A stretch of DNA of 63,838 bases, filler included, from Hyphochytrium catenoides (taxonomy: Eukaryota > Protista > Hyphochytriomycota): assembly GCA_900088475.1 (NCBI GenBank). It is 6 parts of 6 records of this genome, joined end to end, with 100 filler letters (N's around TTAATTAATTAA, not from the genome) between each part and the next. Parts side by side here need not be neighbours in the genome. Positions count along the whole stretch, not along the records: positions 30,839 to 40,740 come from FLMG01002724.1; 5 more parts are not named here. One strand, written 5' to 3'. A model generated the notes under the pieces. It made no database searches. It saw only the letters and a program-made list of their open reading frames with translations, and had not been told where the DNA came from. Shown piece after piece: positions 30,842-40,646 of the stretch. The translations under genes and the position numbers were made by a program. Each line of letters starts with the position of its first letter. Positions within the stretch are counted from its first letter, which is position 1.

Positions 30842-31799
30842 TCACATCCTACCCTTTGAGGTGTGGCGCCTTTGAGGCCGGGTAGAACGTGCGGTCGGCT
30901 CGGTCGGCTGCCCGTACTGCAGATAATAGTCGTTGGACCTGGAAGGGGTAGAGTCTTGGAGGAGGGAGTTCGACGATTGACGAGAAACCACCTGTCCGTT
31001 TATAATTTCTTCCACTGTTTGCTCCTGCGTACCGTCAGGCTTCGTGCTGATAGTCGTCCTCCTTGTGACCTTCCGTCCCTGATTATCTATAGACGTAGAA
31101 CTCTGGACACTTTGAGACGTAAAGCTACCACCTCCTCCTCCAAACCCAGAGCTGAAGCTCATACTGCTGAAGGAGCCACCCGCATTCCCAAAACCGCCAA
31201 ATCCAGACGAGAAGAAAGGATCACTCATCATGGAGCCAAAACCACGATGCCGGTTCCCGAACATAGAGCTACCAAACATGGAGCCGCCGAAGAACGGGTC
31301 GTCATCAAAGAAGCTTGCGAAAGGATCGCGGCCTCCAAAGAAAGCTCTAAAGATCTCTTCAGCATGTCGGGCACTAAAGTGACCATGGCCATACTGATCG
31401 TCATGGAGCCCTTCCGTGCCATAACTGTCATATGCTTCTCTCTTCTGCGGATCACTTAGTACCTCGTACGCCTGTCGCAATAGCGTAAGCGACCAAGGTT
31501 TGAGTTAATGGCAGCGGGGGCAAACTGCTAGTGGGTGCGACGGTTACCTCGGCTATTAGCTTGAACTTCTCTGTGGCTTCTGTACTGTTTCCGTTCTTAT
31601 CTGTAGAACAGAAGCCAAATAGGAATGGTGCATTAGTTCTACCTAAGGCTCACTGCCAAGAGAAGACTAGACTCTGTTGGCATTTACCCGGGTGCCACTT
31701 GACAGCAAGCTTGCGATAAGCCTTCTTAATCTCATCCGCACTGGCGCTTCTAGATACTTCCAACACCTCATAGTAGTCTGTCTGACCTGCGGAGTTCAT
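30842..31799 (-). CDS. DnaJ/Hsp40 class B co-chaperone (DNAJB6-like), 3 exons
   Basis: J-domain [31 protein letters not shown], with the HPD Asp codon split by an intron, then [25 protein letters not shown]-rich region and an S/T-rich C-terminal domain follow. Confidence 0.92.
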
Positions 31800-33025
31800 G
31801 CTTCTGTAAGAACAGCCGTTTCCCACTTCGGTAAGCTCTAACACTTCTTCGGTGGTGTGTCTGCAGTCCGTTGATAGTTATCACAAACTTTCAAAGAGCA
31901 TCAAAATATCAGTGCCCACTACCAAGAAGATTATTATCTTCAAACACGAAGCTCAGAGACTCTCTCGAAGCCTTTTGCAGAGATTATTGCGAAACGGAGC
32001 TCTGTCCCGAAAATGATTTTCGCTGGAAGGAAGCAGCTCCGATTTAGCTTTAGAGGGCTTTAGAAAGGGTTTCCCATTTGCGAACAGACAAGAAACTGGC
32101 ACCTCCAGCTTCAGAATCACAGCACGAGAAGCCAAAAGTAGCAACGGAATGATCTTTGGAAATAAACCCAAACACAATTCGGGAAAGATTCAATCAATAT
32201 AACCACAATTGGGCTTCATGGAGAATGGAATATTCCCGGACGTATGATAGATTTCACACAGTGGCGTGATCCAAAAATAACCACGGATGTGTGTTTATAG
32301 TGATCAAATCACGCCAAGAAAGTTCTAGAGCGACACTAAGTTCGAGACAGAGCAACAATCCACCCTTAGAAATAGTGGGGTTTTCCTAATTGAGAGTATC
32401 TATCTTGGGGAAGAGGGAGCGTAAACTGTAGACTGGGAGATTCATTGCTCGATTGCTGCAAAGCGTCACACCAGTTTCTACTTGAGACTTGAGACAACAA
32501 CAATACCCCATACAAAAATACCAACACGCCCTACCTTGTAAGGTGATTGCCGCTAACGGCTAGAGCTGGGTGCTACAACGATCAAAGCACCTCCAGGAGC
32601 GGCGTGAGATCCAGTCCCGCTCTTTCAAGGCTGACGAAGAGAGATTGATGATGATCCTTCGGGCTTCCCACGCACCGTCCTCCTCGCGCCTCAACAAGCT
32701 CATCATCAGCTGCCTAGAGCCCCAGGACAGGACACCAGGTTCTCCTGCTCAGGCCAGTCCCTTGGATGGCGAGAGTAGATGACCACCTGCCTTCAAACCA
32801 GCCAGTACTTTGACTTCTTTATCCACAGTCATCACTGGTTCGAAAGGGAGAAGCCTTCGGTGATTGGCACAGCTGTCAGCCCTCGATCATAGCTAGTATG
32901 TACCGCTCAGTCATTGGGGCCGGCGCCGTTCCAGAAGCAAGACAAAGGTGATATCAGAGTGATGTCTCTGTGATCGCTCAAGCTCTTCCACAGTGGGCGC
33001 AAGGGATTGCTGCTGCTCCTCCACC

Positions 33026-34480
33026 ATGACTGCACGTCTGGGTGCGATGGCTGGGTGCCGAACCAACTTCTATGGAAGCTGGGCCAATGCGACCTGGAGT
33101 CGGATGCTAATATCTCAGCCTTGCATGAGACCCATCAGCGTGAGGACTTACACTGACCTCACCAGCCCAGTGGCATGGACCCCTCTCAGGGAGCGATGCC
33201 CAGGCCAAAGGCTGGGCCTTTCTGGAAAGGCCTGTGGGAGGGCCCTCTCCACCTTTCAGGTTAGGGCGGAGAAAAAAAGCAGAAGTCTTCCTGTTCGTCA
33301 GCATACGAGAAGGGAGACGGCGGGCCATGGAAGCAAGCCAACTACAGTTGTGGGCTTTAATCGACTGATTGCTAAGTATGGCGCCGCTAAGAACCTTGGC
33401 GCCGTTGAGAAGGTGGTGTACAAGCGCATGCCTGAGGCTGGGGTGAAGCCCAATGAGATCAGCTGCTTTGAGGTACTGAAGGCGTGCATCAAGGCTCGAA
33501 AACTTGAGAGGGCAGAGATGTTTCTCCTTGAGGCTATGCCATCGCTAAGAGTGACGCCAAATGATTTCCACTTCAATTTGCTCCTGGGAGGCTATGGCTC
33601 TCTGGGTAACTGGCAGGCCGTGGAGGATATTCTATACAAGCGCATGCCTGAGGCTGGCGTGAATCCGGATAAGATCAGCTGCTCTGCGGTGCTGAAGGCG
33701 TACAACAAGGCTGGAAAACTTGAGAGGGCAGAGATGTTTCTTCGTGAGGACCTACCGTCGCTAGGAGTGAAGCCGGATGCTGTGCACTTCAACCTGCTCC
33801 TGGGAGGCTATGGCTCTCTGGGTAACTGGCAGGCAATGGAGGAGATTCTGTACAAACGCATGCCTGAGGCTGGCGTGAATCCGGATAAGATCAGCTGCTG
33901 TGAGGTGCTGAAGGCGTACACTAATGCTGGAAAGCTTGAGAGGACAGAGAGGTTTATCCGTGAGGGCCTACCGTCGCTAGGAGTGAAGCCGGATGCTGTG
34001 CACTTCAACCTGCTCCTGGGAGGCTATGGCTCTCTGGGTAACTGGCAGGCAATGGAGGAGACTCTATACAAGCGCATGCCTGAGGCTGGCGTGGAGCCCA
34101 ATGAGATCAGCTGCTCTGAGGTGCTGAAAGGGTATATCAAGGCTGGAGAGCTTGAGAGGACAGAGAGGTTTCTCCGTGAGGGCCTACCATCACTAGGAGT
34201 AAAGGCAACCGCTATTCACTTCACTCTGCTCCTGGGAGGCTATGGCTCTCTGGGTAACTGGCAGGCAATGGAGGAGATTCTATACAAGCGCATGCCTGAG
34301 GCTGGCGTGGAGCCCGATGAGATCAGCTGCTGTGAGGTGCTGAAGGCGTACATCCATGCTGGAGAGCTTGAGAGGGCAGAGGTGTTTCTGCGTGAGGGTA
34401 TGCCATCGCTCGGAGTGAAACAGACCGCTCAACATATCCAGGTATTGAAGAATAAGCGATCATCGTTTCAAGTGTTATAG
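33026..34480 (+). CDS. Intronless P-type pentatricopeptide repeat protein with ten 36-aa motifs and a probable mitochondrial presequence
   Basis: First in-frame ATG is at 33026. Motifs such as FNLLLGGYGSLGNWQAMEEILYKRMPEAGVNPD match the PPR consensus (YN.LI.GY...G..A.....M...G..PD). The N-terminus is Arg/Ser-rich and acid-poor and contains RALSTF. Confidence 0.88.
   Translation: MTARLGAMAGCRTNFYGSWANATWSRMLISQPCMRPISVRTYTDLTSPVAWTPLRERCPGQRLGLSGKACGRALSTFQVRAEKKSRSLPVRQHTRRETAGHGSKPTTVVGFNRLIAKYGAAKNLGAVEKVVYKRMPEAGVKPNEISCFEVLKACIKARKLERAEMFLLEAMPSLRVTPNDFHFNLLLGGYGSLGNWQAVEDILYKRMPEAGVNPDKISCSAVLKAYNKAGKLERAEMFLREDLPSLGVKPDAVHFNLLLGGYGSLGNWQAMEEILYKRMPEAGVNPDKISCCEVLKAYTNAGKLERTERFIREGLPSLGVKPDAVHFNLLLGGYGSLGNWQAMEETLYKRMPEAGVEPNEISCSEVLKGYIKAGELERTERFLREGLPSLGVKATAIHFTLLLGGYGSLGNWQAMEEILYKRMPEAGVEPDEISCCEVLKAYIHAGELERAEVFLREGMPSLGVKQTAQHIQVLKNKRSSFQVL
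33347..34426 (+). repeat. Coding tandem repeat, 5 x 216 bp (each unit encodes two 36-aa PPR motifs)
   Basis: The anchor CTCCTGGGAGGCTATGGCTCTCTGGGTAACTGGCAGG recurs identically at 33581, 33797, 34013 and 34229. Confidence 0.95.
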
Positions 34481-35332
34481 ACCCCGAACAGACCTGAGGG
34501 CGCGGTAGTAAGTGGGACGAGAGCTACGGATGGTAAAAGAAGCCGGAATCCTTGCCGTAGCTCCGAAAGCTCCTAAATAGCTCTGGTGTGGTTGATGGTC
34601 AACAGCAAGTAGTCGGAGGCTAGCTCCGTCTATGGATGCTGCTCGGTCCAGATCATGCCACTGGGAGACCCATCATCACGCTTTACTAGTTTCTTTACAC
34701 CTCCGCGAGTGCGGAGTCTGTCAATAAATTAATCTCTATGGTCTCACGCCTTTAGAGTCATTTTTTCGCCCTTATCGGCCGGCCCCTCAATTTGCATGTG
34801 ACTTCATCCATTTCGCCGCTCTTGCTTTTCATCCTCTCTCCCTGCTGAGCCTCTAACACTCCCTGCTTTCTGTTCGCTAGAGATATGTAATGGGAGGAAG
34901 AAAGAGGATTTGACAATGAATCTGTGGATACTCCCAGACGTGCTGTCTAAAGCTTGAAGATGAGGCGATGACGACCAGGCATCATTGGGCCCATAAGTGT
35001 CAAAGGAAAGATAAGCGCTTTGATTATAGAGTCGCCACTCTCCGAAAAATAACTACCTACTACTGGCTGCCTTTACTCGAGGCTGCGGCCTCGGTCCTGA
35101 AGTTAGGAGGTTCGTGACTGGCGTCTGAGAACGGATCAAGTCAGCTCTGAGGGGCATTTTCTTCTCAACCTGGGCGTGCTGGGGCGGGAGAGGACTGCTG
35201 CCTCGACCTAGGGCCTCTCTCTTAGTCTCAAGCACGCCGCACTTTAGCGTTGGCTCTCTTTCCCTATCCTAGTTCCCACACCTACATTTCCTCTTCTTCC
35301 TTCGTTACTTAGGCCCCTAAGTATTTTGACGC

Positions 35333-38300
35333 TTAAGATAGCTCTGTGACTCCATGCACTGCTGCTTCTGGTCTATCGAAGACGAGCGTGTTGAAGACAT
35401 CGTTGAAAAAGGAAGGATAATATCGGCAAGCGCGCCTGCAATCGGGACCGTAATTGCACTGCAAAGAATCGACATTGTGTTAGCTAACCAAGAGTACCTA
35501 GATGAGACCATTAGGATCCAGAGCTCTTCACTAGCATCAGGAAGGACGTAGAGAGGCGTGAAACTGAGAGGAAAGGGAAGGTTTAAGAAGAACTAGGCCA
35601 CAAGGTAAGGGAGAAGCTGCTGGCGTACCTCGAGGATCACGGGTTGGAAGTCTCCGTCCTCCGAGTGCTCAAACATGACATCTACACCGTACAGAGCTCG
35701 ACTTTGACCCAACTTTCCCAGGCCTACCAAAGCCAGAAGCAGAAAGATAGAGAGAAGTGAGAAAGACAGAGAAAGAGAGAGTGCAGGAGGGATAGAGATA
35801 GAGAGATTGCAAGAGAGGAAGAGAGAGAGAGAGACAAACAAGAGGGCAGCTAAGTAAGATGGAATGCGGGATTCAATAGGTTCACACCAGCTTCCTTCTG
35901 TCTTTCAGCGCAACCTCTTACTGCCGCTTGTGAATCCTTTCGTTACTCTGTCTCGTGAGCTATTTGCTCTCTGACTCCCGCCAGACTCCTCTCGCAGCAT
36001 CCCATATCTCTCTCTCTCCGTCTGCCTTTTCCTCTCTTCCCAGTTCAATACCTTGGGGTGGATCTTTCGCGGCTACAATGGAGAAGAGTTCATAGATTGC
36101 CCGCTCCATCTTCTTCTCGAGCTCAGCCCATCTCAACCCCGGATATTGCTGCTCTAGACCCACCGTGAAGTCTTCAGCCATCACCTGCGCATTGGTCAGG
36201 AGACCATAATTGAGGAGACAAGTTGTAAGGGCTCACGGACGGGAGACAGGAGCAGGCTTGTGATATCTCTCGCCAACTTAACGCAAAACAACTACGAGAT
36301 ATTGAGAGGCCAACGTAACACTGGCACACGACGTTGGGGGATGGAAAGAGGGGAGGGCGATGGATGTGAAGACGAAGAGAGGTACCGGAGCAGAAAGAGA
36401 GAGAGAGAGAGACTTGGATGTACATGGCGAAGATTGATAGAGAGAGAGAGACCTGTATCGCTTCCCATTCCGTATAGTTCATGACAGTGAAATGCTTCTG
36501 AAAGTCGTCCAGGTCCTCCAGATTATACTCTTTATTGGCAATCCGCGGCCAAAAGACCTTGGAACGATAGATCTGAAGAGGCTGAAGAGAGCGCAGCAGG
36601 ACGAGGATGCGCAAGTCGAACTTCTTTCCTTCATAGAGAACGGGGCGATAGAGATACTTGCAGGCTACTTTGGGGCCTGTCTCTGGAAGACGAACCAGGC
36701 TATACAGCGGCAGCGACACGAGAGTCAGTGGCGCGAAGAGCAGACAAAGTCAGAAGCAGGAGAAAGCTGGAAGACCCTTATAGCTCTACTTGAAAATGAC
36801 AATATTCAGTTCGCCTCCTTCGGACTAGCGCGGCAGAGCCATAACGAAGTGGGCAGCGGCGCATCAGAAGAACAGAGCGCAGAAGAAGGATGGTGTCATC
36901 TCTTGAAGAAAGAGAAGCATAGCCGATGAGAAGGGCAAAAGGATTGGGCTGGTGATAGATATGCTCTTACTGCAGGAGATTGTTAGAGACAGCGACATCC
37001 AGACTGCGCGCCATATTCCAGGGTTTACAGATCCAGTGATTGTCTAGGCCTAGGGCCTCTCGCCGCCGAAACTCCTAGGAGAGTGGATGAGCCATTAAAT
37101 AAGTGGAAGAAGAAAGGCCGGAGTTATTATTAGTTGGCCCCGTAATGAACCCCTTACACCTGAGCATACGACACTAATAGCAGGATAGAGATAGCCCGAC
37201 GATAGAGGAGAAGACGTTACTCAGACAGAGAGGAGAGGTCTCACTTTGACAAACTCAGGTAGCTCTGTCTCCATGTTGAAACACTGCGCGAACCAGGAAG
37301 GCCATTGCCCGCCACAGCCCCTAAGAGATAGATGAAGTTGGTATCGACCAAGAAGGAAGAGAAGAGAGAACCAGCAAGCGCACAGGCAAGAAGTATCACG
37401 TTCCTTCTCTTAGTGATAATTCTCGTAGGACGCTGTTCTCTCTCTCTCTCTCTCATTCTCATACTTTTTAATTTGTCTCTCCCTTTAGGTTTTCGATACT
37501 CAGCGACCCTCTCTCTTTCTCCTCTCTTACCTGTAAACCGTCTCTGCTAGTAAATCTTTGCATGTGAGAATCATTTCGTTCGGAAACTGGTTCACCAGCT
37601 TGTTAGGGCTGTCACGTGCTAACCGATCGAACTCCTGAGAAAGACAGACGATCAGCGAGAGGGAAAAAGGAGAGACAGGGATACGAGAGCTCCTCAAAAC
37701 GACTGATGAGAAAGAGGTGAGAGAGGGAGACAGAGACACGGGAACCTCTCGCAAGCTAGACAAGAGCTATGTGTTCCATAGATAGGTGGCCCTCAGACGG
37801 TGCAGCAAAACCGAGCGGCAGCGCCACGAAGCAAGTGGCCCTGCGTGAAGCCTCTTTCTTTCTTCACCTTGAAGTGCTTCACGGTCCATATCACGTCTGC
37901 CTCATCCTCAGAGTCTACGAACTGCAGACCATCCAGGGAAAGAAAGCTCTTGAGAAGCTCCAGATCTAGTAGGAGAGGGAAGGCGCCGGAAGGCTATTAG
38001 GAGAATGGATTCAAGGTAGGTGAACGGAACTTCAAAAGGTGAGCCACGTTATAGGTAATAGAATCGCAAAGAGAGGGCCACAGAACAAGAGAGAAGAGTG
38101 CAAGAGAGAGAGAGAGAGAGAGAGAGAGTGAGAGAGAGAGAGAGAGCGAGAAGAGACAAGCTAACAACAGAGAGGGTAGTGTGGGACTGTAATGGGCGGG
38201 TCTACATAGAGTCTCAGATTTGAGAAGAACGAGAATATACAGCGAGAAGGCTTTCAAAGGACATAGAAGTAAGAGAGAGAAAAGCCTTGAACGAGAACCT

Positions 38301-38592
38301 GTGTAAACTCTGCAGATTCCAGACGCCAAAGAGAAAGGTCTGAGCTGCTTTTCTCCCGCAGTAAAAGACGTGAGGAGCTGCTCTCCTGAGCGTACATCTC
38401 CTCTCACCAGCATGCCAGCATCCCTATCCGTTCTTTTCTCCCCTTCGGCGACTGTTCCTGGCAGCGCCTCCTCAGTTGGGAAGATTTCAGGGAAGAGAAC
38501 TGATAGCTTTAAGGTTTTCAGGTTGCCATCCGTGGTGCCTAGGGATAGAGGCTGATCGTTATGTTATGTTATGTTATGTGGAGAGAGAGAGG

Positions 38593-38635
<43 letters not shown>

Positions 38636-39178
38636 GCAGACAAAGGCATTGGGAGCCAGTGGACGATCTGAAGGCCGCTGGTAGCTTCAAACGGGAAAGA
38701 GAGGAGGGAACAACGCAAGGGACAGAAAGGGTTGATAGTGAGTAGGTGCAAGGCACTAAAGCGCGAAGAGATACTATTAGGACAGCGATAAGGGCCAGAA
38801 AATAGCAAATGGTGATGGCAAACGAGGAAGAGAGAGAGAGAGAGAGACGGAGAAAGATTATTATGAGTACATAGATGGACAGGTAGAAAGAGATTGATAA
38901 AGAGAGAGAGAGAGAGCTCTGAAGCAGAGTTCTTACCGGGGAACAAATCGTTAGTCACCTCTTCGCCGCTCTCAAGGTCTCGCAGTGGCCACAGCAGAGA
39001 AAACGAGATGCCTTGAGGGACGTAAAGGAACGGGACAAGGGCCACTGAAGGAGAGAGAGACGGACGGATGGCGGATCCAAACTCATCCAGAATGTACCTA
39101 ACGCAGTGGGGGTGGGGATTAAGAGAGAGAGAGAGAGAGAGAGAGANNNNNNNNNNNNNNNNNNNNNNNNNNNNNNNN

Positions 39179-39226
<48 letters not shown>

Positions 39227-39254
39227 GAGAGACAGAGAGACAGACACAGACACG

Positions 39255-39285
<31 letters not shown>

Positions 39286-39991
39286 TGAGAAAGAGAGAGA
39301 GAGAGAAAGAAGACAAGGGAGGAGCAAGGGTCATCTAGGTTGAGGGAAATGAAGGGTCAACCGAGGCTGCCCATGAGGGGCTGTCACCATCAGAGAGAGG
39401 AGCTCCACAGAAGGAAAGAGCAGGGAGAACAGCCAATAACAGATAAAAGAAGCTTATTGTGTGCTTCTTCTTGTGTGTGAGAGATGTGAGAGCGACACAA
39501 GTGAATTAAGGGGAGGAAATCTGGAAGGTGAAAGGCAGAAAGGGGAAGAGAGAAAGAGCCTGACACTGAGGGGGATAGATAGATCGATTGAGAAATCTAG
39601 AGAGAGAGAGAGGGAGATAGAGAGAGAAAAGGCACAAGGCAACATGCAATAGAGCATCTAGAACTGAAATCCGCTTCGTCTGGCAGTGAGTACGTACCAG
39701 ATGGGTTTAGAGTCTTCAGGAGGCCGGTTTGCGAGCTTGTAAGTCTGAGCGTACTTCCATATCCTCTCAGAGACGAGAGAGATAGTTCTCTCTCTCTCTT
39801 CGCTTGTCTTCCCCTCTTCGGCTAATGTAAAAGGAAGATCCATCAGTGACGCCATCCGCTGCAGGAGCCCTGGACAAGAGCATAAGCGAAAGTAGAATTG
39901 TTAGTCCAGATGGGAAGAGAGAAGCGCGTGAAAGAGACAAAGGACGATAAATGAGGATGGCAGAGCAAGCGACGCATCGGCGTCAGCACAG

Positions 39992-40034
<43 letters not shown>

Positions 40035-40275
40035 CGGAAACACATGAGGAGGCCTGAGAAAGAAATAGGTCGTCTGCATGAAGGGAACAACAAGAAAGAG
40101 AGGAAAGTTGACGTACAGGGAGGGACGGTGGGAAAGAGACAGAGAAAAGAGAGAGGGAGACCACAGACCGGGGGAGAGGAAGAGAGAGACAGAGAGAGAG
40201 GGCAAAAAAAAAGAGAAAGAGAGATATGAGAGAGAGAGGGGGGGGAGAGAGAGAGAGGGGACAGAGAGAGAGATG

Positions 40276-40315
<40 letters not shown>

Positions 40316-40646
40316 CTGACAGACAGAGAGGGTCACGGGGCGGCGAAGAGTCGAGAGAGACTTGTCGAAGAGAAAGACTTCCATACCGAGATTGCCGCGG
40401 AGGGTGTTCCTGACGCTGTCAGCAGTGAATGTCCAGGCGTGGTCCACCAGGAAGACTGCTTTGTCATCCTTCGCGCTGAGCCCATCCTCATGGCCCACGA
40501 AGACGCGGAGAGAACTCTCTTTGTGTGTCTCTTCCTCTCTTTCTTCTTCCTTTTCTCTCCCCTCTGAAGCTTCCTCTTCTTCTGCTTCCTCTTCTCCTTC
40601 TACTCTAGCGATCATAAAGAACTCTCCTGCATCGAATATTTCCTCT
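35333..40646 (-). CDS. TTLL12: Tubulin-tyrosine ligase-like protein 12 (5' end lost at the contig break), at least 12 exons
   Basis: Spliced translation contains EIFDAGEFF, VFLVDHAWTF, WYILDEFGSAI, SLLWPLRDLESGEEVT, VNQFPNEMILTCKDLLA, NHWICKPWNMARSLD, KFDLR, FQKHFTVMNY, RALYGVDVMF and ILECNYGPDC. Introns are GT-AG and it stops at TAA 35333. Confidence 0.93.

What the first reader, a model, noticed from the sequence alone, without database searches (positions are those of the whole stretch)
33026..34480. TALE-like PPR gene: recently amplified 216-bp heterodimeric unit of 36-aa motifs with variable RNA-recognition residues
Seen: ten motifs, each exactly 36 aa (canonical P-type PPR is 35), strictly alternating types A and B. 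They are encoded by five 216-bp units with long identical DNA stretches, and the gene has no introns in an intron-dense genome. Residues at motif position 5/last are A1 N/N, B1 F/N, A2 N/D, B2 S/D, A3 N/D, B3 C/D, A4 N/N, B4 S/T, A5 T/D, B5 C/T. These positions vary even where the scaffold is almost invariant, especially in type A. Established: position 5 and the last residue form the PPR base code (ND=U, NN=C/U, TD/SD=G), and natural PPR motifs are normally very degenerate. Inference: this may be a young, modular RNA-binding array, probably mitochondrial (Arg-rich leader, RALST), diversifying by tandem duplication or conversion. The predicted target is roughly Y-?-U-G-U-?-Y-?-G-?. It could represent an undescribed reprogrammable PPR subfamily or a natural designer scaffold.
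Basis: partly seen in the sequence, partly recalled or inferred. Interest (0 to 1): 0.75.

Follow-up and report, generated by a model that had tools for sequence, protein, structure and literature searches.

The report
Ordinary PPR gene with duplicated motif pairs
This is an intact, intron-free gene for a pentatricopeptide-repeat (PPR) RNA-binding protein, probably sent to an organelle, whose ten 36-residue motifs arose by copying a two-motif block five times; it is a tidy example of a known kind of protein, not a new class.

Summary
ORF 33026-34480 (+) encodes 484 aa: a basic 107-aa leader, ten contiguous 36-aa PPR motifs alternating A/B (33347-34426), and a 17-aa tail. The motifs are encoded by five in-register 216-bp units. 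Pfam, NCBIfam, PDB sequence matches and a confident AlphaFold model all give a P-class PPR solenoid.

- **Age of the array:** units 2-5 are 85-90% identical (dS 0.19-0.33, dN/dS about 0.4) and unit 1 is about 71% identical (dS about 0.55). The array is moderately old and constrained, not fresh.
- **Specificity positions:** all four code positions vary among units 2-5 (Fisher p = 0.007). Five other positions vary more and six vary as much as the most variable code positions, so the TALE comparison is weak.
- **Relatives:** an exhaustive HMMER search found no protein above 34% identity, so no subfamily could be shown.
- **Precedent:** near-identical PPR arrays are present among the database hits (dinoflagellate SACEK-type, metagenomic, PLS triplets). 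Looser two-motif periodicity occurs in four hits.

With the published PPR code, A motifs read pyrimidines and B motifs purines. The predicted target is about 5'-Y?UGUGY(A)G(R)-3'.

Verdict: new member of a known kind, of modest interest.

The parts
33026..34480 (+). Complete single-exon PPR gene: ATG to TAG, 484 aa
   Evidence: ORF list and first ATG. Pfam PPR_2/PPR_3/PPR/PPR_1 and TIGR00756 all score above their cut-offs. No further PPR-like coding sequence lies in the piece.
33026..33346 (+). N-terminal leader, 107 aa, probably an organelle-targeting presequence
   Evidence: 14 R + 4 K against 1 D + 3 E, with no acidic residue in the first 40 aa. The leader has low model confidence (pLDDT under 50 for residues 1-102). 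Targeting is inferred from composition only.
33347..33562 (+). Unit 1: motifs A1 (N/N) and B1 (F/N), the diverged edge unit
   Evidence: 71-72% nt identity to units 2-5 and dS 0.53-0.63.
33563..33778 (+). Unit 2: motifs A2 (N/D) and B2 (S/D)
33779..33994 (+). Unit 3: motifs A3 (N/D) and B3 (C/D)
   Evidence: 90% nt identity to unit 2.
33995..34210 (+). Unit 4: motifs A4 (N/N) and B4 (S/T)
   Evidence: Shares a 67-nt identical run with unit 3.
34211..34426 (+). Unit 5: motifs A5 (T/D) and B5 (C/T)
34427..34480 (+). C-terminal tail of 17 aa plus stop; modelled as one capping helix
   Evidence: The translation shows a weak resemblance to the start of an A motif. There is no DNA repeat homology beyond 34426. 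The model has helix 468-483.
30842..31480 (-). Neighbour: DNAJB6-like exon, divergent from the PPR gene and cut by the piece edge
   Evidence: Pfam DnaJ end at residues 2-18. The best relative is 47% identical.
35320..40615 (-). Neighbour: multi-exon TTLL12-like gene, convergent with the PPR gene (approximate limits)
   Evidence: Pfam SET_TTL and TTL hit separate short open frames. The stretches between these frames are rich in (CT)n.

Best explanation
This is a lineage-specific P-class pentatricopeptide-repeat protein of an unidentified, poorly sampled eukaryote.

A basic leader of about 100 aa probably directs it into an organelle, with the mitochondrion the better guess. There the ten helix-hairpin motifs form a right-handed solenoid that binds about ten consecutive nucleotides of a single-stranded RNA, one motif per base, through residue 5 and the last residue of each motif. 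It has no catalytic domain. It would therefore act as P-class PPRs usually do, by protecting, positioning or exposing an RNA segment (stabilisation, end definition, translation or processing).

The array arose when a pair of already diverged neighbouring motifs (A+B, 72 aa, 216 bp) was duplicated in tandem. An older event separates unit 1 from the rest. Later in-register duplications, or unequal crossovers, gave units 2-5. The scaffold has since been under purifying selection while the base-contacting residues and several others drifted or were selected apart.

Read with the published code, A motifs (N or T at position 5) specify mostly pyrimidines and B motifs (S, C or F) mostly purines. The ancestral unit probably read 'UG', and the present protein reads roughly 5'-Y-?-U-G-U-G-Y-(A)-G-(R)-3'.

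Shown: family, fold, repeat anatomy, divergence figures. Inferred: targeting, RNA binding, target sequence, role.
For: - **Family:** PPR_2 6.6e-29, PPR_3 2.8e-27 and TIGR00756 6.2e-40 are all above their cut-offs. Best PDB sequence matches are designer PPRs bound to RNA (5i9h 1.9e-54, 5i9f) and maize PPR10 (4m59 1.1e-48). In that alignment motif position 5 lies under the designer N5 and the last residue under D35.
- **Fold:** the AlphaFold2 single-sequence model has pLDDT about 90 over residues 103-478 as 21 paired helices. Top Foldseek hits are cPPR, dPPR and PPR10.
- **Repeat history:** the 216-bp period has no indels. Units 2-5 are 85-90% nt identical, dS 0.19-0.33, dN/dS 0.36-0.49. Unit 1 has dS 0.53-0.63. 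There is an excess of synonymous change over the neutral expectation (my tally of about 17 of 44 changes; binomial p = 0.019).
- **Code residues:** N/D, N/N, T/D, S/D and C/D are all combinations with measured base preference in Yan et al. 2019 (PMC6468296).
- **Leader:** composition.
- **Gene limits:** a single exon between a divergent DnaJ gene and a convergent TTLL12-like gene.
Against: - No experiment, transcript or organelle genome is available, so targeting, RNA binding and the target are inferred.
- The PPR code was measured on 35-aa plant-type motifs, and transfer to 36-aa motifs is untested.
- F/N and C/T have no assigned base, and S/T gave only a smeared band for A.
- B motifs have C, not Y/F, at position 4. 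B4 and B5 have lost the conserved proline before the last residue, so some B motifs may not read a base at all.
- The leader has no recognisable signal peptide, which argues only weakly against a complex plastid.
Confidence: 0.75

Rival explanations
1. One reading: this is a member of a young, fast-evolving 'reprogrammable' PPR subfamily. A near-invariant two-motif scaffold is amplified, and positive selection acts mainly on the base-reading residues, as in TALE effectors or plant Rf-like PPRs.
For: - All four code positions vary among units 2-5, against 18 of 68 other positions (Fisher p = 0.007). The mean-entropy permutation gives p = 0.014.
- A2, the third specificity-linked position, also varies.
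- The B5 codon is T[T/C/G/C/G]T across units 1-5, inside a 12-nt stretch identical in all units. The S/C alternation conflicts with the majority 23|45 split.
- B36 with B35 changed by several bases at once in units 4 and 5.
Against: - Only five copies exist, so the tests have little power.
- B12, B13, B22, A2 and B35 are more variable than any code position.
- Overall dN/dS is about 0.4 and dS 0.2-0.3, so the array is neither hypervariable nor young.
- No paralogue or orthologue was found in 1.84 billion representatives, the word-indexed library or metagenome contigs. A 'subfamily' is therefore undemonstrated, though the source genome itself could not be searched.
Confidence: 0.15
2. The repeat number, or the order of units, is an assembly artefact of a short-read scaffold. 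The true gene then has a different number of A/B units.
For: The piece carries a 32-N gap at 39147-39178 inside a microsatellite, so it is a scaffold. Units 3 and 4 share a 67-nt identical run, and other pairs share 40-56 nt. These runs could mislead a de Bruijn assembler using a short k.
Against: - Every unit differs from every other at 10-15% of bases.
- The frame is intact over all 1,080 nt and the period is exactly 216 with no indel.
- Variants show a mostly tree-like pattern (nine 23|45 sites against three and two for the other splits), not a chimeric one.
Confidence: 0.07
3. It is a PPR-fold protein that no longer binds RNA: a protein-binding solenoid, or a decaying recent expansion with no function.
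For: - B motifs carry unusual residues (C at position 4; F or C at position 5).
- B4 and B5 lost the conserved Pro.
- No conserved orthologue was found.
Against: - The 484-codon ORF is intact.
- dN/dS is about 0.4, with a significant synonymous excess.
- A motifs keep the canonical N5 with D or N last, and the B13 Lys of designer PPRs is kept in most units.
- The solenoid model is confident.
Confidence: 0.05

Closest known systems
P-class PPR proteins and consensus designer PPRs (maize PPR10, PDB 4m59; dPPR 5i9f/5i9h; cPPR 4wsl/5orm)
   Same: - The same Pfam and TIGR family, and the same helix-hairpin solenoid.
- N/T/S at position 5 and D/N at the last position, in register with the designer motifs.
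- Ten motifs and no extra domain, like dPPR-U10.
   Different: - Motifs are 36 aa, not 35, with one extra residue in helix b.
- Identity to the solved designer and plant PPRs is 24-28%.
- Two motif types alternate instead of one consensus motif.
Plant restorer-of-fertility-like (RFL) PPRs
   Same: These are P-class PPRs with an unusually conserved scaffold and high diversity at positions 5 and 35. They gain, lose and shuffle whole motifs by unequal crossover (PMC5075784).
   Different: RFLs are a flowering-plant clade of 15-20 motifs of 35 aa, sitting in multigene clusters. Their selection was shown across many paralogues. Here there is one gene, no paralogue in hand, intragenic copies only, and no clade membership (all database relatives at or below 34% identity).
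SACEK-type PPRs of dinoflagellates and other CASH lineages
   Same: These are natural PPRs with runs of near-identical repeats. Examples are P0024 from Symbiodinium sp. Y106 (88% lag-35 identity), and P0142 from Effrenium and P0130 from Noctiluca (review PMC12787238). P0024 has the joint-highest identity to the query (34%), and the A motif shares its downstream Trp-Gln and the M-P-x-A-G-V-x-P-D end.
   Different: The defining S-A-C-E-K at positions 9-13 is absent. A has G-G-Y-G-S there and B has K-A-Y-x-K. SACEK arrays repeat a single 35-aa motif, not a 72-aa pair.
PPRs with multi-motif repeat units (PLS triplets; two-motif hits P0058, P0036, P0099, P0160)
   Same: The duplication unit spans more than one motif. 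Triplets of 101-102 aa reach 64-77% identity in Diphasiastrum and Adiantum proteins. Periods of 71-72 aa occur in four of the 150 best hits. P0036 aligns almost without gaps over 355 aa of the array.
   Different: Those two-motif arrays are much more diverged (mean BLOSUM62 score per residue of 1.3-2.2 at lag 71-72). Only the query exceeds its one-motif identity by more than 0.2 at the two-motif lag. There is no S motif and no E/DYW domain here.
TALE repeats of Xanthomonas effectors
   Same: This is an analogy only: tandem helical repeats, one repeat per base, and specificity carried by two residues.
   Different: TALEs are a different fold and family and bind DNA. Their repeats are nearly identical outside the two variable residues (my own knowledge, not tested here). 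Here units differ at 15-24% of residues spread over 22 of 72 positions.

Membership tests
PPR family (Pfam PF01535/PF13041/PF13812; TIGR00756) | Significant match to the PPR profile HMMs in tandem | tested here: met
   PPR_2 scores 100.2 bits (cut-off 30) over 6 stretches. PPR_3 scores 95 bits. TIGR00756 scores 132.9 bits (cut-off 20).
PPR family | Helix-turn-helix hairpins stacked into an alpha-solenoid | tested here: met
   The AF2 model shows paired helices through residues 108-483 at pLDDT about 90. Foldseek top hits are cPPR, dPPR and PPR10, probability 1.00. This is a prediction, not a solved structure.
PPR family, P class | Canonical 35-aa P motifs only, with no L/S motifs and no E/DYW extension | tested here: inconclusive
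   There are no short motifs and no C-terminal domain. However, all ten motifs are 36 aa, one residue longer than P motifs, through an insertion in helix b. This is best described as a P-class length variant.
PPR family | Base-specifying residues at position 5 and the last position drawn from the known code | tested here: met
   A motifs carry N/N, N/D, N/D, N/N and T/D. B motifs carry S/D, C/D and S/T, which have measured preferences. F/N and C/T are unassigned (PMC6468296).
PPR family | Sequence-specific binding of single-stranded RNA in an organelle | not testable with these tools
   Only the leader composition is available (net charge +14 over 107 aa, no acidic residue in the first 40 aa). 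No targeting predictor, transcript or organelle genome was available.
PLS-class / DYW editing factors | P-L-S triplets followed by E and DYW deaminase domains | tested here: not met
   The period is 72 aa from two 36-aa motifs. Only 17 aa follow the array, and there is no DYW hit.
SACEK-type PPR | S-A-C-E-K at motif positions 9-13, with a conserved downstream Trp | tested here: not met
   Positions 9-13 are G-G-Y-G-S in A and K-A-Y-x-K in B. Only the Trp, at A17, is shared (definition from PMC12787238).
Plant Rf-like PPR clade | Membership of the RFL clade, genomic clustering of paralogues, and diversifying selection at positions 5 and 35 | tested here: inconclusive
   No relative exceeds 34% identity. 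The 9.9-kb piece holds no second PPR gene. Intragenic variability at the code positions is raised (p = 0.007) but is not the highest. The genome could not be searched.
TALE repeats | 33-35-aa TAL repeats with a repeat-variable diresidue at positions 12/13; DNA binding | tested here: not met
   No TAL family appears among the Pfam hits at E up to 1. The structure and PDB matches are all PPR.

The most novel reading that the evidence does not exclude
The gene may be the visible tip of a lineage-specific PPR family in an unsampled protist. In that family a fixed pyrimidine-reader/purine-reader motif pair (A+B, ancestrally reading 'UG') is the unit of growth. New RNA specificities would arise by adding pairs and changing residues 2, 5 and 36. 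That would make it a natural two-motif modular scaffold with 36-aa motifs, usable as an alternative designer-PPR backbone.
Probability: 0.15. Interest if true: 0.55.

Novelty: new member of a known kind. Interest (0 to 1): 0.3.

Why it matters
If the reading holds, the gene is a clean natural case of a PPR array growing by duplication of a two-motif block, with the base-reading residues changing on a conserved scaffold. That is useful as a teaching example. It might also serve as a naturally stable 36-aa scaffold for engineered RNA binders.

It does not open a new question. The database hits include near-identical PPR arrays (SACEK-type, metagenomic and PLS-triplet proteins). Motif duplication with code-residue diversification is established for plant Rf-like PPRs. 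Designer PPRs already give a programmable scaffold.

The more general point is that the source organism is absent from the protein libraries. 'No relatives' therefore reflects sampling, not uniqueness.

Tried and rejected
1. **Further exons.** The sequence CAG|GTATTG at 34438-34446 looks like a splice donor. tblastn of the array against the whole piece, and three-frame translation of 34400-35700, found no further PPR sequence. The convergent TTLL12-like gene begins about 850 nt downstream. I kept the single-exon model.

2. **Repeat homology beyond the array.** None was found on either side.

3. **A four-motif (432-bp) duplication**, to explain the S/C/S/C alternation at B5. Rejected: only 2 sites support 24|35, against 9 for 23|45.

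4. **A and B as two known motif subtypes.** A and B share 10 of 36 residues with each other and 7-14 with the repeat consensus of unrelated PPR arrays. No clear assignment emerged.

5. **Finding paralogues or orthologues.**
   - The word-indexed search gave only 20-30% identical proteins, those named being plant PPRs.
   - Exhaustive HMMER gave 12,645 hits, none above 34% identity and no self-hit.
   - The degenerate-pattern scan and an exact 32-nt scan of metagenome contigs both came back empty.

6. **Identifying the organism** through the DnaJ neighbour. The best hit is 47% identical, to a EukProt transcript (GILK01...) whose taxon I could not resolve.

7. **Rfam scan of the piece.** Nothing was found.

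Full report
**Observation**

The piece holds one long open frame on the + strand, 32993-34480, whose first ATG is at 33026. Tandem Repeats Finder reports a 216-bp period over 33419-34419 (4.6 copies, 88% matches, no indels). The repeat finder gives copies spaced exactly 216 nt apart.

Cut from nt 33347, the translation falls into ten contiguous 36-aa motifs ending at 34426. They strictly alternate between type A (x-x-H-F-N-L-L-L-G-G-Y-G-S-L-G-N-W-Q...) and type B (x-I-S-C-x-E-V-L-K-A-Y-x-K-A-G-x-L-E-R...).

Identity at a lag of 72 aa is 0.84, against 0.27 at 36 aa. The A and B consensus share only 10 of 36 residues. Unit 1 is much more diverged (71-72% nt) than units 2-5 are from each other (85-90% nt).

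**Anatomy and surroundings**

The protein of 484 aa has three parts.
- A 107-aa leader with 18 basic and 4 acidic residues, none acidic in the first 40. It has low model confidence.
- The 360-aa array.
- A 17-aa tail that the model folds as one capping helix.

The sequence CAG|GTATTG near the end looks like a splice donor. No further PPR-coding sequence exists downstream, and repeat homology stops at 34426.

Upstream, on the opposite strand, lies a DNAJB6-like exon (30842-31480). Downstream, convergent, lies a TTLL12-like gene (SET_TTL plus TTL domains). It is broken into many short exons, with (CT)n-rich stretches between them and a 32-N assembly gap at 39147-39178. From my own knowledge, most plant PPR genes also lack introns.

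**What it is**

Pfam PPR_2 (6.6e-29), PPR_3, PPR and PPR_1, and NCBIfam TIGR00756 (6.2e-40), all pass their curated cut-offs. The best solved relatives by sequence are designer PPRs bound to RNA (5i9h, 1.9e-54) and maize PPR10 (4m59, 1.1e-48).

In that alignment the motif's N5 lies under the designer N5 and the last residue under D35. Each motif carries one extra residue in helix b. A single-sequence AlphaFold2 model gives pLDDT about 90 over residues 103-478, as regular helix pairs. Foldseek returns cPPR, dPPR and PPR10 first. There is no S motif and no E or DYW extension. This is a P-class PPR with a 36-aa length variant.

**History of the array**

Nei-Gojobori estimates between units 2-5 give dS 0.19-0.33 and dN/dS 0.36-0.49. 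Against unit 1, dS is 0.53-0.63. I tallied about 17 synonymous changes among about 44 from the codon table. That exceeds the neutral expectation (binomial p = 0.019), so the scaffold is constrained.

Two-by-two splits among units 2-5 are mostly tree-like: nine sites for 23|45, three for 25|34 and two for 24|35. This points to successive in-register duplications with a little conversion or recurrent change. It does not point to duplication of a four-motif block.

The diverged edge unit and more similar interior units fit the usual pattern of arrays that grow by unequal crossover. 'Recently amplified' is therefore only partly right.

**Are the code positions special?**

Among units 2-5, 22 of 72 positions vary. 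All four code positions (A5, A36, B5, B36) are among them, against 18 of 68 others (Fisher p = 0.007). The mean-entropy permutation gives p = 0.014. A2, the third specificity-linked position, varies too.

The B5 codon reads T[T/C/G/C/G]T in units 1-5, after 12 nt that are identical in all units. This is one of only two sites that contradict the majority tree in the 24|35 sense.

Against this, B12, B13, B22, A2 and B35 are more variable than any code position. Much of the last-residue variation also sits in a generally variable inter-motif loop (A34, A36, B1; B35, B36, A1, A2). With five copies the test is weak. The evidence allows diversification of specificity but does not show TALE-like concentration of change.

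**Relatives**

The word-indexed search found only 20-30% identical proteins, those named being plant PPRs. The exhaustive HMMER search of 1.84 billion representatives gave 12,645 hits, none above 34% identity and none that could be the protein itself. Two scans of metagenome contigs were empty.

The DnaJ neighbour's best relative is only 47% identical. The organism is therefore simply not in these libraries. Absence of relatives says little about a paralogue family in its own genome, which I could not search.

- Eleven of the 150 best hits have arrays with at least 60% repeat-to-repeat identity.
- These include 35-aa SACEK-type repeats in Symbiodinium sp. Y106, Effrenium voratum and Noctiluca scintillans, and 32-34-aa repeats in metagenomic proteins.
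- They also include 101-102-aa PLS triplets in Diphasiastrum and Adiantum. SACEK-PPRs are described in PMC12787238.
- Two-motif periodicity (71-72 aa) also occurs in P0058, P0036, P0099 and P0160, but far more diverged.

What is particular here is the combination of a two-motif unit, both motifs of 36 aa, at 84% identity. Among these 151 proteins, only the query shows it.

**Likely mechanism**

By homology, the array should bind about ten bases of single-stranded RNA, N-terminus toward the 5' end, one motif per base. Yan et al. 2019 (PMC6468296) measured the relevant combinations:
- ND and NN read U (NN also C).
- SD, TD and also CD read G strongly.
- ST gave a smeared band with A.
- Cys at position 5 behaves as a purine reader.

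A motifs are mostly pyrimidine readers and B motifs mostly purine readers, so the ancestral A+B unit probably read 'UG'.

F/N and C/T remain unassigned. The code was measured on 35-aa motifs. B4 and B5 have lost the conserved proline. All of this is inference. The basic, acid-poor leader fits a mitochondrial or simple-plastid presequence, but no predictor was available.

**Comparison and verdict**

The protein meets the sequence and fold criteria of the PPR family. It fails those of the PLS/DYW, SACEK and TALE families.

In evolutionary logic it resembles plant Rf-like PPRs. Those have a conserved scaffold, variable positions 5 and 35, and motif gain by unequal crossover (PMC5075784). It is not a member of that clade.

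It is a new member of a known kind: a lineage-specific P-class PPR with an unusually regular two-motif array. The risk of an assembly artefact is low but real, given 40-67-nt identical runs in a gapped scaffold. Interest is modest.

**Limits**

The TTLL12 exons were not joined into a spliced model.

Noticed in passing
window 35320-40615 (- strand): A TTLL12-like gene (SET_TTL and TTL Pfam domains) is split into many short exons. The stretches between them are packed with (CT)n/(GA)n microsatellites, totalling 402 nt of perfect runs in the piece.
   Followed up: partly
window 39147-39178: A run of 32 N sits inside a (GA)n tract. The piece is therefore a gapped scaffold, which bears on how far repeat copy numbers can be trusted.
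   Followed up: yes
window 30842-31480 (- strand): A DNAJB6-like exon (end of the J domain plus a G/F/S-rich region) is cut by the piece edge. Its best database relative is only 47% identical (a EukProt transcript, GILK01000924), so the source organism is not represented in the protein libraries.
   Followed up: partly
proteins P0024, P0103, P0142, P0130 (hits): These are SACEK-type PPRs with 5-11 near-identical 35-aa repeats, three of them from named dinoflagellates (P0024, P0142, P0130) and one from an unnamed ENA contig (P0103). In P0024, N at position 5 is almost invariant, while the last residue and the first residue of the next motif vary (D/G/N; P/Q/R/V).
   Followed up: partly
proteins P0058, P0036, P0099, P0160 (hits): These PPR proteins alternate two motif types with a 71-72-aa period. 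P0036 aligns almost without gaps over 355 aa of the window's array at 27% identity.
   Followed up: partly
window 33467-33469 and the same codon in each unit (+216 nt): The B-motif position-5 codon is TTT, TCT, TGT, TCT, TGT in units 1-5. Only the middle base changes, and the 12 nt before it are identical in all five units.
   Followed up: partly
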